From NCBI RefSeq assembly GCF_001194135.2, contig NC_068995.1, positions 9,627,051-9,682,032 on the forward strand: 54,982 nucleotides of DNA, written 5' to 3'. The stretch comes from Octopus bimaculoides. Taxonomy: Eukaryota. A program made the translations under genes and the position numbers. Under the pieces are notes generated by a model. It was not told the origin of the DNA, searched no databases, and saw nothing but the letters and a program-made list of their open reading frames with translations. Numbering within the stretch: position 1 is the first letter of the stretch; each line of letters begins with the position of its first letter. This document shows, one piece after another, positions 27,997-48,727 of this stretch.

Positions 27997-28102
27997 CTGT
28001 CATGTTGTTGGCGATGATTGTGATGTCAGCATCAGTGCTACTGTTATTGTTGCTGGTAATATCAGTCGGCGCCACAAAAACTTCCAAACAATTACCATCC
28101 AT
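27997..28102 (-). CDS. CHAF1A: CHAF1A probable first coding exon
   Basis: Strong start context AAAATGG, reads MDGNCLEVFVAPTDITSNNNSSTDADITIIANNMT, strong phase-1 donor CAG|GTGAGC matching exon 2, with E2F/CCAAT motifs just upstream. No homology support recalled for this peptide. Confidence 0.68.
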
Positions 28103-28342
28103 TTTGTGTATCCTTTCTCTCCAAACACCTTAAATATATTTATATATAAATATATTTAAGCAAGTCGAAAGTTTACAAGACAAACTGGCGATACAGCAAT
28201 CTGTATTTAAATAAAAACAAAATTTCGGAAAATTCCTAAAGATCTTGATTTCCCCCTTCGTTATTTCTTCGCTTCGGTTATCCACACTTTAAAAATAATT
28301 CATGTGTTTGTATTTTGAGGACGACATCAAGAAAATACGTAG

Positions 28343-28439
28343 ACTTCCGAAACCTCTATGAAGGAATTACAAAGCTACTTTTCATATGTTGGCGGGAAAG
28401 TAGGGGAATTTCCCTGAGATTTTCGAGCATTCTCATTGG
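28343..28439 (-). promoter_or_regulatory. Candidate CHAF1A promoter: ETS, E2F, NF-kB-like and CCAAT motifs
   Basis: ACTTCCG 28343-28349; TTGGCGGGAAA (TTTCCCGCCAA on minus) 28389-28399; GGGGAATTTCCC 28403-28414; ATTGG 28435-28439. All lie 240-340 nt upstream of the ATG at 28102. Confidence 0.6.
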
Positions 28440-29174
28440 TGAATAATAATCATAACTCTAACGGCACGTAGAGGTTAAAAACAAAATTAGAAATGTAATT
28501 TTAATTAATATTTTTTTAATTTATGAAGTAATAAAATAAATCATATTCTGTTCTTTTTTTCCTTGCATATATTTAATATTCGTATATGCTTATGTATATA
28601 TCCATGTAAGTGTCAGTGTGTGTATACAGGGTTATGTAAATCCCCTACCCTTCTTACTACCCTTACAAAACTGTTAGCTAATCAAAAACAAATATTACAT
28701 TAAATGCGGATTTTATAGTAAGAGTACAACCGGATGTAGAAATTAAAGAAGTCGGCAAAAAAATATAATATTGTCAGAAGTAAATAATAATTTTTTTTTT
28801 TATAACAGTGATAATATTAATAATAGAAATAATAATAGTTATTATATTAATAATAATATCAATATCAATAATGAACGTAAAAAAATCAGACGATACAAAG
28901 TTTCGTCTCGCTCACAAGTAACACTTGAAATAAATCAACCATGTTACTTATTGCAGCCGACAGTTCTTTTTCATTCATATCGCTTGTATTTCCTTAGTTT
29001 TCTTTTAATTTTTCGTCTATCTTTCTCTCATCACCTCTTAACCATCTTTCTTCCATTTGTTACCGTCTCTCTGTCGAATTCTTTATCTTTATTTCGTTTT
29101 TGTCATTTACTCTCTTTCACTTCCTCTATATCACACCCTCTCCCTCTCATTTTCATTACGTTTTTTTTCTTTGT

Positions 29175-29490
29175 TACTCTTTTACTCTTTTACTTGTTTC
29201 AGTCATTTGACTGCGGCCATGCTGGAGCACCGCCTTTAGTCGAGCAAATCGACCCCAGGACTTATTCTTTGTAAGCCTAGTACTTATTCTATCGGTCTCT
29301 TTTTGCCGAATCGCTAAGTTACGGGGACGTAAACACACCAGCATCGGTTANNNNNNNNNNTATATATATATATATATATATATATATACGACGGGCTTCT
29401 TTCAGTTTCCATCCACTAAATCCACTCACAAGGCTTTGGTCGGCCTGAGGCTATAGTAGAAGACACTTGCCCAAGGTGCCACGTAGTGAT
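29175..29490 (-). mobile_element. SINE family A, near consensus, with a 10-N gap
   Basis: Tail and core complement with the head truncated. Confidence 0.88.
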
Positions 29491-30704
29491 GTATGTATAT
29501 GTGTATGTATGTATGTATGTGTGTATGCATGTATGGCTTCGCTGGTCGAAACTTAGAAGTTACTATCAATATTATTCTTGTTAAAGAATGATAAATCTGT
29601 CTGCTACCAAATGTATTGAGTAATCCTGTGCGTGTGTATGTGCGCGTGCACGTGCACGTATGTTCCTTACGGATCTGAAAACTGAATTGTCAATTTTGAC
29701 GTATGAAGTAACAAAACATTCAGTAGTCCATTCGGCCACCAAATAAAGTATGTTTTTTGCTCAACAACTCTTTTTTCCTACAAAAATAACCTTGAAAAGA
29801 ATTTTGAGGTCTTTAGCTAAGGGAGGCAACTCTGCCTATGCTTAAAATACATGGGAATGAAACTTCAAAGATATACTGTCAACTTTATTAGTATTATTTA
29901 GTAGATAATCTTTTAATGTGAAGTATGTTTGTCTGTGTTTTGTTTAGCCCAGAGTTGACTCTGATGTAGCTGACCCATTGCATAGTTTTTTTTTTTCTTC
30001 CTGAAATACTGTAAGTCTGTGTTTCTTTTCATGAAAGGGTGTAATTTAAGAGATTTAGTTCCTATTTGTAGTTGCTCAAGTTACCACAGAGACACCTTTG
30101 TGTGTGTGTGTGTGTGTGTGTGTTTTGTTGTGGTGTAAAAATACTTTTTCTCAGAATATTTTGCACAACAATTTTTAAAGAAATCTGGACATCTTTCTTA
30201 CTGCTAACCATTCAACTTCAAATTATAATTGTTAATTGTTGGAAGTCAAGTAGACTGAGATGTACACATATAGTGTTATCATATAGAGTGAAAGTTCAAT
30301 ATGAAGTTTTGAACTCATTATCCTGTGATTGGTAATCCATTACCTTAAATGTGAAGCCATTAAGTCTTTAAACATTATTTTACTGGGTTAAGTCTTTTGA
30401 CTCACCACGATGGGGTATATAACCTTCAAAAATTGATAATACTGACCTCAGTATGACATAAAAACAAACATTGATATGTATGTATATGTTAAGGGGTCAA
30501 GCTAGCAGAAATATACACTGGGAAAATTGCTTAGTGGCGTCCTGTCTGCCTTAGTGTTCTGAGTTCAAACTCCACCAAGGGCAACTTTGCCTTTCATCTT
30601 TTTAGGGTCAATATCATTGAATTACCCCTCCCCCAAAATTTCAGGCCTTGTGCCTTTAGTAGAAAGGGTTTTAACATGAAACAAACATTAATATTTATGT
30701 ATAG

Positions 30705-30865
30705 GTGAAGGAGTGGCGTGTGGTAAGTAGCTTGCTTACCAGCCACATAGTCCCGGGTTCAGTCCCATTGCATGGCACCTTGGATAAGCGCCTTCTACTA
30801 TAGCCTTGGGCTGACCAAGGCCTTGTGAGTGGATTTGGCTGACAGAAACTGAAATAAGCCCGCTG

Positions 30866-45810: not shown

Positions 45811-47010
45811 GAGTTTAATCAGAAGAGAAACACGGCAACTCTCACCGGTCTTAGAAAGGTCTGCAAAGGCCACAAGAAAACATCTAACCCTTTGGTCAAG
45901 ACCAAGCAAGCTGAAAGAGAAAAAAACGAGCTGGCATTGTCATATCTGGAACGCCTTCGATTATCGGTCTACACCACTTATACGTCACCACCACCACCAC
46001 CACCACCACTACTACTGTGTCAACGCCTTCACCACCGCCTCCGCCTTTTCTCTACAATCATCACCAGCTTCTTTCTGTACGCCATCATCATCTCCATCAC
46101 GTCCATCATCACCACCACCAGCATCAGCATCACCCGCTCCTTTAATCAATCACATCATTACCATCATCATCAGCAGCAGCAGCAGCGGCAGCAATACCAT
46201 CACCACCACCAGCACCAGCATCATCGTCGTCGTCATCACCAACAACTAAATGAACACCGTAATGATCGTAAACAACGTTTGCCCCCTCTCTCCTCCCCTT
46301 TCGTCTCACCGTACAACATTAAGGGAGTAGCAGCAGGGGAGCAGTGGTAGCAGTAGTAGAACAGCAAGAGTAAAAAGCGAGGAGGAAGGGGAGAGAAAGA
46401 CACAGAGTATGGAAAGAGAGTGGGTGAGAGAAGCAGCGAGCGTCGGAGTAACAGCGCTGCAGCAAAGAGGAGTAGTAAGAGTAGCTTCGCAAATTCACAT
46501 ACACACACATATATACACCCACGCGCAACCTCATATAGATACACACACACACACACACACACACACCCACGCATATACACGTATACATGCATGCACACAT
46601 ACGCGTGCGAGCAGATGGCAAAAAACGCACACTCACACCACACATGTGTGTTTGAGTGTGAGAACTTACTTTTTCTCACGCGTACCCTCTCTCATATCCA
46701 TACTCATCTTCTTGCTCTGACACTCACTCATATTCGAGCGTACGCTCTCCTTTTCGTAGACTCTCCCAAATTTAGTCACCCTTCTCTCTATTCGTCACCC
46801 TCTCTATTTGTCAGACACATACACACTCACCCTACACTCCTATATTTCCTCTATCTCTCTCTCACTCACTCACACAGTTATTTATATTCTTTCACTCAAA
46901 CACACTCTTCTTACTCTCACTCTCTCTATTCTTACCTCCCTCACTTTCTCCACACCCCTCTCATATATTCGTACTCTTTCACTCAGACACTTACCGTTCC
47001 CTTTGTCACT

Positions 47011-47235
47011 CCCCCTCTCATATTCATACTCATTCACTGTGACACTCTCTGCTTCCTCTCTCTATATCTCCCTTCCTCTCCCCCCTCTGTCTGTTTCTTA
47101 CATATAACCCCCTCTCTCACATTCATACTCGTTCACTGTGACACTCTCTGCTTCCACTCTCTCTATCTCCCTTCCTCTCCCCGTCTGTCTGTTTCTTACA
47201 TATACGCCCCTCTCTCATATTCATACTAATTCACC
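47011..47235. repeat. ~99-bp minisatellite, about 2.3 copies
   Basis: The string ATTCATACT recurs at 47022, 47121 and 47219, with the intervening sequence conserved between the first two units. Confidence 0.9.
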
Positions 47236-47644
47236 TAGACTGTCCCCCCTCCCTCTCTCTCTATATTCTTACTCCCCCCTTTCCCCCTCTTTATTCCTCA
47301 CACACATAACGTTCATTACCTTCCCGCTCACTCATTCATAACCCAATCACTCACTCCCTCTCTTTTTCTACACACATACTCACACTCGCAAACGTATACA
47401 CGCTCCTACATCTACGCAATCCCATATACACACAGATGTATATGTGCACTCGGCACTTTTATACCTTGGCTTTGGCTAGATCGAATCTTCTTACACGATC
47501 TTCTGCTTTAAAATAGTAGATAATATTGGTGGGGGGAAAATAACAGTGAGATATTGATATACTATACACGCACACACACACGCACATATATATGCACTAA
47601 CATGTCACATATATAAAACTCTATAGATATATATTAATACATAG

Positions 47645-47679
<35 letters not shown>

Positions 47680-48682
47680 ATAAATATTATTATGGTATGC
47701 TTTCGTTCTGCGATTTTCTCATTTCTGTCTTTGAATACGAAGACAGAATAGAAACCATCAACAGTGGAACTGATATTGTAAGCAAACAGTACTTTGGTCG
47801 GTGAGATTGGCCATTTTCACACATACACATACACGCATACAAACATATACACCCAGTTTATACATATATATATATATGTATATAGATATATATATCCTTC
47901 AGATATTTCCACACGGTGTGTTCACGTACAGGCTTGCTACTTGACAAACTAACACACAAACACACACAGGCTCTCGTAGATATCTATAAATTTATATATA
48001 GATATTCGTATATATATTTTAATATATATATATATACATAGAGAGAGTGAGAGTGAGTGAGAGAAAGAGCCTCATACATCCATACAAGCATATATAATAT
48101 ATATATATACACACACCCTCGTGAAAGAGCAGGAGTACATTTGCCAGTTTTGTGCGGTGTGTCACCGCTCTCTTACAATTTAATATTTATTTACAGGAAC
48201 GGTATTAACTTCTAATATATATATCTATTTCTATATATACATAGATTGTCTGTGCATATATATAAATATTTATATATATATATATATATCCATATACACA
48301 TATATATATATAAATATATATATAACTATTAATAAATTTACATATGTATATGTATAAGCAATACAATATACATTTATCCTGAAAACGGAGGATAAAGACA
48401 AATATATATATATATACATATATATAATTATATACACGTATATATATATATCAGCACACACATACATATAGATATATACATATACATGTATAAATGATAG
48501 ATATATTGCTGTTGTAAGCACCGTAGTTGAAGAAAGGGGTTTATTTACCCGCTAAAACATAGGAGTCCCATATCTACAGCATTCAGATACTATATATATA
48601 TATATATATAAATTATATATACACATTGTATATATTTATACACACTCCTTAACGCCGTGAAGTTCTTACAAAAATAGGAATC

Positions 48683-48727
48683 ATGTCTTTCGCTGGATTA
48701 AGGAAGCAGATTAACAAAGCCAATCAG
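48683..48727 (+). CDS. endoA: Endophilin-A (SH3GL family) first coding exon, N-terminal amphipathic helix H0
   Basis: ATG TCT TTC GCT GGA TTA AGG AAG CAG ATT AAC AAA GCC AAT CAG|GTAAGG = MSFAGLRKQINKANQ. Nearly identical to the recalled Drosophila EndoA start (MAFAGLKKQINKANQ) and similar to vertebrate MSVAGLKKQFHKATQ. Exon 2 was not found within the window. Confidence 0.93.

What the first reader, a model, noticed from the sequence alone, without database searches (positions are those of the whole stretch)
27997..48727. CHAF1A and endophilin-A sit head-to-head, the same arrangement as human CHAF1A/SH3GL1, with SNAPC3 next door
Seen: CHAF1A starts on minus at 28102, an endophilin-A first exon starts on plus at 48683, no other recognisable gene lies between them, and SNAPC3 converges on the CHAF1A 3' end. 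Recalled knowledge: human CHAF1A and SH3GL1 (endophilin A2) are adjacent and divergent on 19p13.3, and SNAPC3 lies on 9p22 in the same broad region as the paralogue SH3GL2. Inference: this is a pre-bilaterian-split microsyntenic block that was partitioned by vertebrate genome duplication but survived the heavy rearrangement of coleoid genomes. Keeping a functionally unrelated S-phase gene and a synaptic-vesicle gene head-to-head suggests shared or interleaved regulation, here spread over ~20 kb rather than the few kb I recall for human.
Basis: partly seen in the sequence, partly recalled or inferred. Interest (0 to 1): 0.78.

Follow-up and report, generated by a model that had tools for sequence, protein, structure and literature searches.

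The report
Ancient CHAF1A–endophilin–SNAPC3 gene neighbourhood in octopus
In this octopus DNA three unrelated housekeeping or neuronal genes (SNAPC3, CHAF1A, endophilin-A) sit in the same order and orientation as in a scallop, and the CHAF1A/endophilin head-to-head pair is also found in an oyster, an acorn worm and a bird, so this is a real but ordinary example of very old conserved gene order.

Summary
The window is Octopus bimaculoides.

- **CHAF1A:** it runs on the minus strand from its ATG at 28102 to its stop at 7380-7378.
- **SNAPC3:** it converges on the CHAF1A 3' end, on the plus strand, with its stop at 5328-5330.
- **Endophilin-A:** a 15-codon exon at 48683-48727 (+) is identical to the N-terminus of a full-length octopod endophilin-A.
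- **Between the two start codons:** 20,580 bases in which I found no Pfam, Rfam or tRNA match, only SINE-like repeats, microsatellites and four N gaps.

The same divergent pair occurs in other lineages:

| Species | ATG-to-ATG spacer |
|---|---|
| Scallop | 345 bp |
| Acorn worm | 336 bp |
| Oyster | 5 kb |
| Bird | about 1.5 kb |

It is absent in a hoverfly and in one teleost. The scallop also has SNAPC3 convergent on CHAF1A, exactly as in octopus. In the vertebrates checked, UBXN6 takes that place.

The ancestral state is therefore a compact shared 5' region, which octopus has expanded about 60-fold. Octopus CHAF1A keeps CCAAT and E2F motifs about 300 bp upstream of its ATG. Where endophilin transcription starts is unknown.

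This is a new, well-documented member of a known class (conserved ancestral 5'-5' microsyntenic pairs). Shared regulation in octopus remains untested.

The parts
3278..3523 (+). SNAPC3 internal exon. The ORF holds the exon; the Pfam match covers ORF residues 30-82.
   Evidence: Pfam PF12251 SNAPC3, E 3.3e-16, profile positions 67-121 of 199. 47% identical to the Pecten SNAPC3 exon.
5172..5330 (+). SNAPC3 last coding exon with stop codon TAA (5328-5330)
   Evidence: Pfam PF12251, E 3.7e-11, profile positions 156-198 of 199. 60% identical to the Pecten SNAPC3 last exon. Stop codon read.
7378..28102 (-). CHAF1A (chromatin assembly factor 1 subunit A) coding region, ATG 28102-28100 to TGA 7380-7378. 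It contains assembly gaps at 17237-17608 and 26935-26958.
   Evidence: Most segments are at or near 100% identity to XP_014784367.1. Pfam PF11600, PF12253 and PF15539 are precomputed for P0001.
27998..28102 (-). CHAF1A first coding exon (35 codons), donor GTGAGC at 27997-27992
   Evidence: The N-terminus is conserved in O. vulgaris and in another cephalopod protein.
28392..28439 (-). Candidate CHAF1A core promoter. CCAAT at 28439-28435 and an E2F-type site CTTTCCCGCC over 28391-28400 (the scanned 8-mer TTTCCCGC is 28392-28399), in the sense of CHAF1A, 297-337 bases upstream of its ATG.
   Evidence: The same CCAAT-then-E2F order lies upstream of the CHAF1A ATG in Glandiceps (-125/-100) and Pecten (-48/-42). 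An E2F site lies at -246 in the bird. These are motif matches only; function is inferred.
28103..48682 (.). Spacer between the two start codons: 20,580 bases, of which 1,013 are N. It holds five SINE-like repeat copies (about 29186-29489, 30720-31175, 37042-37249, 38547-38652, 42319-42950) and many microsatellites (for example CAT x135 at 33672-34078).
35950..36670 (.). The one assembly gap (721 N) whose join cannot be checked from the window
   Evidence: Neither flank matches a repeat that bridges the gap.
48683..48727 (+). Endophilin-A first coding exon (MSFAGLRKQINKANQ), donor GTAAGG at 48728
48728..54982 (+). Start of the endophilin-A intron after the first coding exon; it runs off the window
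   Evidence: No further endophilin exon by tblastn. The Argonauta orthologue spans 136 kb.

Best explanation
The window shows three ordinary single-copy genes in an ancestral bilaterian arrangement: SNAPC3 (+) converging on CHAF1A (-), and CHAF1A diverging from endophilin-A (+).

In compact genomes the two start codons of CHAF1A and endophilin-A are only about 340 bp apart. Both genes must then be transcribed from one short shared 5' region, a bidirectional-promoter type of arrangement. Almost no breakpoint can fall between them without damaging a promoter. That is the most likely reason the pair has stayed together since before the protostome/deuterostome split (inferred).

In the octopus lineage the spacer grew about 60-fold, to 20.6 kb, through SINE-like insertions, microsatellites and other non-coding DNA. 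Order and orientation were kept (shown).

CHAF1A still has a cell-cycle-type promoter signature (CCAAT plus E2F site) within 340 bp of its ATG (motifs shown, function inferred). So the two genes in octopus most likely now use separate promoters about 20 kb apart (inferred). No protein-coding gene was detected between them (shown only for long ORFs, Rfam and tRNA).

In vertebrates the block was resolved after genome duplication. SH3GL1 stayed with CHAF1A, while SNAPC3 stayed on the paralogous segment with SH3GL2 (partly shown, partly recalled).
For: Gene identities.

Same divergent pair elsewhere:
- Glandiceps talaboti: BAR+SH3 gene on the minus strand with ATG at 9664, CHAF1A ATG at 10001.
- Pecten maximus: ATGs at 9655 and 10001, with SNAPC3 convergent 5 kb beyond the CHAF1A end.
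- Saccostrea cucullata: 4,997 bases between the ATGs.
- Bird Rostratula: exon MSVAGLKKQFYKASQ|gtgagg on the opposite strand, 1.5 kb upstream of the CHAF1A coding start.

Vertebrate 3' neighbour is UBXN6. Cattle gene order UBXN6, CHAF1A, SH3GL1: PMC7668599. Mouse Snapc3 and Sh3gl2 lie in one interval: PMC11099346.

Promoter motifs. TTTSSCGC has 6 matches in the window against 1.84 expected, one of them at -297 of CHAF1A in sense.

Spacer content.

The AG lying 5 nt upstream of the endophilin ATG follows a poor pyrimidine tract compared with the real acceptors of CHAF1A. This argues weakly against a spliced 5' leader.
Against: - No transcript data were available, so neither transcription start is known.
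- The endophilin ATG exon could be a second exon, with a non-coding first exon lying next to the CHAF1A promoter.
- The 721-N gap at 35950-36670 could hide a promoter, an exon or a small gene.
- The pair is lost in a hoverfly and at the chaf1a locus of one teleost. No CHAF1A was detected within 10 kb of Limulus endophilin. Constraint is therefore not absolute.
- The motif evidence consists of short consensus matches.
- Retention in octopus despite a 20-kb spacer is not explained by the 'small target' argument alone.
Confidence: 0.8

Rival explanations
1. The bidirectional promoter is still intact in octopus. Endophilin-A transcription starts next to the CHAF1A promoter (about 28.4-29 kb). A non-coding first exon is spliced across a roughly 20-kb 5'-UTR intron to the ATG exon at 48683. 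The expansion would then be intronic, and the two genes would still share one promoter region.
For: An AG lies 5 nt upstream of the ATG at 48683, preceded by a TTAAC branch-point-like motif. The ancestral state is a 340-bp shared region. Retention of the pair through coleoid rearrangements is easier to explain if the promoter is still shared.
Against: The putative acceptor has an A-rich, pyrimidine-poor tract, unlike the ten real CHAF1A acceptors in the window. No CRE (TGACGT) lies near 28.4 kb, unlike in Pecten and Glandiceps. No transcript evidence is available.
Confidence: 0.25
2. This is a regulatory-block (bystander) arrangement. Enhancers for one gene, most plausibly neuronal enhancers of endophilin-A, lie inside or beyond the neighbouring genes or in the 20-kb spacer, so a break would separate the gene from its enhancers.
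For: This is the general finding for conserved microsyntenic pairs (PMC3514665). Metazoan microsyntenies retained in cephalopods have larger intergenic regions than cephalopod-specific ones and are co-expressed (PMC9023564). About 12 kb of the spacer matches no other sequence in the window.
Against: Neither gene is a developmental regulator of the kind typical of such blocks. In the scallop and acorn worm there are only about 340 bp between the genes. I could not test non-coding conservation because no second octopod sequence of this region was obtainable.
Confidence: 0.15
3. The adjacency in the window is an assembly artefact: a scaffold misjoin across one of the N gaps, most likely 35950-36670.
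For: There are four gaps in the spacer, and the 721-N gap cannot be checked internally. The gene model of CHAF1A itself is distorted by another gap.
Against: A misjoin would have to recreate by chance the exact neighbour and orientation seen in four independent assemblies of other animals. Two of the four gaps lie inside single repeat copies with collinear flanks. In Argonauta no gene lies within 10 kb upstream of endophilin, which is compatible with a large spacer in octopods.
Confidence: 0.03

Closest known systems
Conserved ancestral microsyntenic pairs (CAMPs) of Irimia et al. 2012 (PMC3514665)
   Same: Two unrelated, non-paralogous genes kept adjacent across several metazoan phyla, in the 5'-5' orientation that is enriched and best conserved in that survey. 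The intergenic distance is very short in compact genomes.
   Different: I could not see whether this pair is in their list, because the supplement is not held. In octopus the spacer is 20.6 kb, far above the <1 kb signature of a bidirectional promoter.
Bidirectional-promoter gene pairs such as HSPE1-HSPD1 (cited in PMC3514665)
   Same: Head-to-head genes separated by a few hundred bases: 336 bp in Glandiceps and 345 bp in Pecten between the start codons. The arrangement is conserved over very long times.
   Different: HSPE1 and HSPD1 are functionally linked and co-expressed. CHAF1A (S-phase chromatin assembly) and endophilin-A (endocytosis, synaptic vesicles) are not known to be. Co-expression was not tested here, and octopus no longer has the short spacer.
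Metazoan microsyntenies retained in coleoid cephalopods (Schmidbaur et al. 2022, PMC9023564)
   Same: An ancient block of three genes kept in an octopus despite genome-wide reshuffling, with enlarged intergenic distance.
   Different: None of the three gene names occurs in the supplementary text held for that paper, so the block is not documented there by name.
'Bilateria novel' syntenic block 1674 in Lingula anatina (PMC8851819, supplementary file 4)
   Same: It contains SNAPC3 (g2695) next to an unannotated gene (g2696, OG0013404), alongside DET1, HNRNPK and tropomyosins. The unannotated neighbour could be CHAF1A.
   Different: The identity of g2696 could not be checked. CHAF1A and SH3GL are not named in the held text, and the file was cut when stored.

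Membership tests
CHAF1A (CAF-1 p150 subunit) | CAF1A acidic (PF11600), CAF1A dimerisation (PF12253) and p150 C2 (PF15539) domains in one protein | tested here: met
   All three are precomputed for P0001, which maps at or near 100% identity to the window.
CHAF1A (CAF-1 p150 subunit) | N-terminal PCNA-binding motif of the Q-x-x-L-x-F type, and KER and ED low-complexity regions | tested here: met
   The sequence shows TQARLSFKPL at residues 54-63, a Lys/Glu/Arg-rich stretch, and DSDDEWEEEEPGE...DGWMVPHGYLSEGEG. The motif assignment comes from my knowledge of human p150.
Endophilin-A (SH3GL) | N-terminal amphipathic helix exon MSxAGLKKQxxKAxQ ending at a conserved phase-0 intron | tested here: met
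   15/15 identity to Argonauta endophilin-A. The same exon and donor occur in five other species.
Endophilin-A (SH3GL) | N-BAR domain followed by a C-terminal SH3 domain | not testable with these tools
   The rest of the gene lies outside the window. The orthologues in Argonauta, Pecten, Saccostrea and Glandiceps carry BAR+SH3.
SNAPC3 (SNAPc subunit 3 / SNAP50) | PF12251 SNAPC3 domain reaching the C-terminal zinc-binding end | tested here: met
   Two exons are above the Pfam cut-off (60 and 43.5 bits against 23.8), covering profile positions 67-121 and 156-198 of 199.
Conserved ancestral microsyntenic pair | Immediate adjacency of the orthologues in several distant lineages | tested here: met
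   Cephalopod, two bivalves, a hemichordate and a bird. Absent in a hoverfly and one teleost.
Conserved ancestral microsyntenic pair | Conserved relative orientation | tested here: met
   Divergent (5'-5') in all five positive species. SNAPC3 is convergent (3'-3') with CHAF1A in octopus and Pecten.
Bidirectional-promoter gene pair | Less than about 1 kb between the two transcription starts | tested here: inconclusive
   Necessarily met in Glandiceps and Pecten, where the ATGs are 336 and 345 bp apart. In octopus the ATGs are 20,580 bp apart and the transcription starts are unknown.
Bidirectional-promoter gene pair | Correlated expression of the two genes | not testable with these tools
   No expression data were available.
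Genomic regulatory block | Conserved non-coding elements spread over bystander genes and acting on a target gene | not tested
   No second octopod sequence of the region could be fetched.

The most novel reading that the evidence does not exclude
CHAF1A and endophilin-A have shared one short E2F/CCAAT/CRE-containing bidirectional promoter since the bilaterian ancestor. Octopus would still use it, reaching the endophilin coding exons through a roughly 20-kb leader intron. A replication-coupled chromatin gene and a synaptic endocytosis gene would then remain transcriptionally coupled in an animal with a very large nervous system.
Probability: 0.2. Interest if true: 0.5.

Novelty: new member of a known kind. 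Interest (0 to 1): 0.3.

Why it matters
It gives a clean, well-anchored example of an ancient divergent gene pair, with a third convergent gene, whose spacer ranges from 0.34 kb to 20.6 kb across animals. That makes it a convenient natural experiment. The question it can address is whether conserved head-to-head pairs persist because of true promoter sharing or simply because the breakable target is tiny. It also shows how a duplicated ancestral block was divided between human 19p13.3 and 9p22. It does not reveal a new kind of genetic element.

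Tried and rejected
**Look-ups and searches that gave little or nothing**
- Look-ups of O. vulgaris CHAF1A (P0002), Mizuhopecten CHAF1A (P0008) and the Pomacea endophilin fragment (P0047) returned 'not on record'. No second octopus genome sequence of the spacer could be obtained, so no phylogenetic footprinting was possible.
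- Argonauta endophilin was found, but its gene is too long for DNA to be returned.
- A protein search with a 111-aa mollusc-type endophilin N-terminus returned only short fragments.
- A 368-aa chimeric probe returned mostly insects and one cephalopod.
- The metagenome scan gave two short contigs of no use.
- The CpG/GC profile shows no CpG-island-like promoter anywhere in the window. CRE motifs occur at chance frequency.
- Literature searches for the pair by name found no description of its conservation. The supplements of PMC3514665 and PMC7530604 are not held.

**Readings rejected**
- A hidden gene in the spacer: nothing was detected.
- Chance resemblance of the 15-aa exon: it is an exact match to an octopod orthologue, with a conserved intron position.
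- Endophilin-B: its N-terminus is different, from my knowledge of SH3GLB.

**Caveat on probes**
- The human SH3GL2 and Drosophila EndoA probe sequences were written from memory and used only as probes.

Full report
**Source and gene identities**

A rough concatenation of minus-strand ORFs retrieved XP_014784367.1, 'chromatin assembly factor 1 subunit A-like [Octopus bimaculoides]'. It matched at 100% identity and carries Pfam PF11600, PF12253 and PF15539. tblastn of that protein places 14 segments on the minus strand from 28102 to 7381.

The first coding exon is 28102-27998, followed by GTGAGC. The stop TGA is at 7380-7378. The N-terminus MDGNCLEVFVAPTD... is conserved in O. vulgaris and recognisable in a more distant cephalopod protein.

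On the plus strand, ORFs at 3278-3523 and 5172-5327 hit Pfam SNAPC3 well above the curated cut-off. The second reaches the end of the profile and is followed by TAA at 5328-5330. SNAPC3 and CHAF1A thus converge, with about 2 kb between their stop codons.

**The endophilin exon**

Positions 48683-48727 encode MSFAGLRKQINKANQ, followed by GTAAGG. Probes written from memory (human SH3GL2, fly EndoA) match only this exon in the window. Taken alone, the identification would rest on 15 residues.

It is secured by two results:
- The 398-aa endophilin-A3-like protein of the octopod Argonauta hians (BAR plus SH3) begins with exactly these 15 residues.
- The same 15-codon first exon, ending ...KAxQ|gt, is present in Pecten, Saccostrea, Glandiceps, Limulus and a bird.

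The Argonauta gene spans 136 kb. The absence of exon 2 from the last 6.3 kb of the window is therefore expected.

**The assembly gaps**

All four gaps in the finding lie in non-coding DNA, so reading frame is irrelevant. The question is whether the joins are real.

| Gap | Result |
|---|---|
| 29351-29360 | Interrupts a single copy of a roughly 400-bp SINE-like repeat. Left and right flanks match the two halves of intact copies elsewhere in the window, in the same order and orientation, 33-69 bases apart in the clearest intact copies. |
| 42514-42760 | Same situation as 29351-29360. |
| 35201-35235 | Lies in an AT microsatellite and is uninformative. |
| 35950-36670 (721 N) | No bridging evidence in the window. 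|

The best argument that the last join is right is external. A misjoin would have had to recreate the neighbour and orientation seen in four unrelated assemblies.

**What lies between the genes**

The 20,580 bases between the start codons contain:
- 1,013 N;
- five SINE-like copies;
- many microsatellites;
- about 30% sequence repeated elsewhere in the window, similar to the 24-27% in the flanking gene regions.

There is no Rfam family and no tRNA. None of the 18 most protein-like ORFs has a Pfam match. This test cannot exclude short exons or non-coding RNAs, and the 721-N gap could hide something.

**Comparison with other animals**

Gene ranges in the look-up tool are coding ranges, so distances are between start codons.

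| Species | Upstream of CHAF1A (divergent) | Spacer | 3' of CHAF1A |
|---|---|---|---|
| Glandiceps talaboti (hemichordate) | 349-aa BAR+SH3 gene | 336 bp | no gene called within 10 kb |
| Pecten maximus (scallop) | BAR+SH3 gene | 345 bp | SNAPC3, convergent, 5 kb beyond CHAF1A |
| Saccostrea cucullata (oyster) | BAR+SH3 gene | 4,997 bp | a different gene |
| Rostratula benghalensis (bird) | uncalled exon MSVAGLKKQFYKASQ with donor gtgagg; I recall this as the SH3GL1 N-terminus | about 1.5 kb from the CHAF1A coding start | UBXN6-like gene (PUB/UBX) |
| Crotophaga (bird) | contig ends at the CHAF1A 5' end | not readable | UBXN6-like gene |
| Diretmus (teleost) | a SCAMP gene | - | UBXN6-like gene |
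| Episyrphus (hoverfly) | a kinase gene | - | not endophilin or SNAPC3 |
| Limulus | no CHAF1A detected within 10 kb upstream of endophilin | - | - |

The scallop has the complete three-gene arrangement of the octopus window.

A cattle paper lists UBXN6, CHAF1A, SH3GL1 consecutively (PMC7668599). A mouse QTL interval of 6.5 Mb contains both Sh3gl2 and Snapc3 (PMC11099346).

That human SH3GL1 and CHAF1A are divergent and about 2 kb apart on 19p13.3 is my recollection, not a tool result. So is the statement that 19p13 and 9p are paralogous segments.

**Interpretation**

The pair is present, in the same orientation, in a lophotrochozoan class pair (bivalve, cephalopod) and in two deuterostome lineages. 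With roughly 10^4 possible neighbours per genome, this cannot be chance. The pair dates at least to the protostome/deuterostome ancestor and was lost in some lineages.

Immediate adjacency of SNAPC3 is shown only in molluscs. Its assignment to the bilaterian ancestor rests on the vertebrate pattern: SH3GL1-CHAF1A on one paralogous segment, and SH3GL2 with SNAPC3 about 2 Mb apart on the other. There is also a hint from a published table, where Lingula SNAPC3 belongs to a 'Bilateria novel' block next to an unannotated gene (PMC8851819).

**Mechanism**

In the scallop and the acorn worm, both 5' UTRs and both promoters must fit into about 340 bp. Those 340 bp contain three elements:
- a CCAAT box, in the sense of CHAF1A, followed by
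- an E2F-type site (TTTCCCGCC in Glandiceps, TTCGCGCC in Pecten) 40-100 bp upstream of the CHAF1A ATG, and
- a TGACGT element toward the endophilin side.

The octopus has the same CCAAT-then-E2F order at -337 and -297 of the CHAF1A ATG. TTTSSCGC is rare in the window, with 6 matches against 1.84 expected.

I infer that the octopus CHAF1A promoter stays next to its coding start. The 20 kb were inserted between it and the endophilin coding exon.

Whether endophilin transcription still starts beside CHAF1A, with a long leader intron, or near 48.6 kb cannot be decided without transcript data. The only AG close to the ATG follows an A-rich tract, unlike the strong acceptors of CHAF1A. I therefore favour separate promoters, at roughly 55:25, with the remainder for other arrangements.

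The very small ancestral spacer is a sufficient neutral explanation for long retention. Persistence after expansion in oyster and octopus hints at, but does not prove, additional regulatory entanglement.

**Novelty**

Conserved ancestral microsyntenic pairs, their enrichment in 5'-5' orientation and short spacers, and the survival of a few hundred such blocks in coleoids are established (PMC3514665; PMC9023564).

I found no paper text that describes this particular pair or triple. It may well sit in supplementary lists I could not read.

It is a new, well-supported member of a known kind, and of modest interest.

Noticed in passing
window 16601-16783 (-) and gap 17237-17608: The public O. bimaculoides CHAF1A model contains a 29-residue segment (NQFCNTISGCLTVAVSWADVSNYITLYNL). 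O. vulgaris and another cephalopod have a Lys/Glu-rich stretch there instead (AKLEEKRKKDEERKIKEEEKVKEKEEE). The true exon is probably inside the 372-N gap, and the model bridged it with a spurious exon.
   Followed up: partly
window, about 15 places, e.g. 24257-24660, 19582-19946, 29186-29489, 42319-42950: A roughly 400-bp SINE-like repeat with an internal microsatellite is scattered over both strands. Two assembly gaps (29351-29360, 42514-42760) fall exactly in that microsatellite.
   Followed up: partly
L002 9950-9975 and L001 9900-9920: The CHAF1A promoters of scallop and acorn worm share TTCSCGCCRACTTCGAA (15 of 17 bases). This is an E2F-type site followed 3 bases later by TTCGAA, which resembles a cell-cycle homology region. 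Octopus has TTTCCCGCCAAC but no TTYGAA after it.
   Followed up: no
L008 8419-8463 (-): In the bird Rostratula benghalensis the first coding exon of an endophilin-A gene (MSVAGLKKQFYKASQ) is not annotated. It lies 1.5 kb upstream of CHAF1A in a 73% G+C spacer.
   Followed up: partly
window 33672-34078 and 34234-34575: Long imperfect CAT/CCA triplet arrays give ORFs of up to 233 codons made of His, Ile, Met, Asp or Ser runs in all frames. They are repeat artefacts, not genes.
   Followed up: no
window 42940-43209 (+) and 44431-44770 (-): ORFs with Arg/Lys-rich motifs (e.g. PGRKPRGKPRTRW, RKRPSGRACRTWRR) look like tails of decayed retrotransposon ORFs, but they have no Pfam match.
   Followed up: partly
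PMC8851819 supplementary file 4 (Lingula anatina scaffold LFEI01000029): A published 'Bilateria novel' block lists DET1, HNRNPK, tropomyosins and SNAPC3 (g2695) next to an unannotated gene (g2696). The unannotated gene may be CHAF1A. Human DET1 lies near SH3GL3 by my recollection, which would tie in the third endophilin paralogue.
   Followed up: no
window 27177-27184 (-): A second E2F-type match (TTTGCCGC), in the sense of CHAF1A, lies in its first intron about 0.9 kb downstream of the ATG.
   Followed up: no
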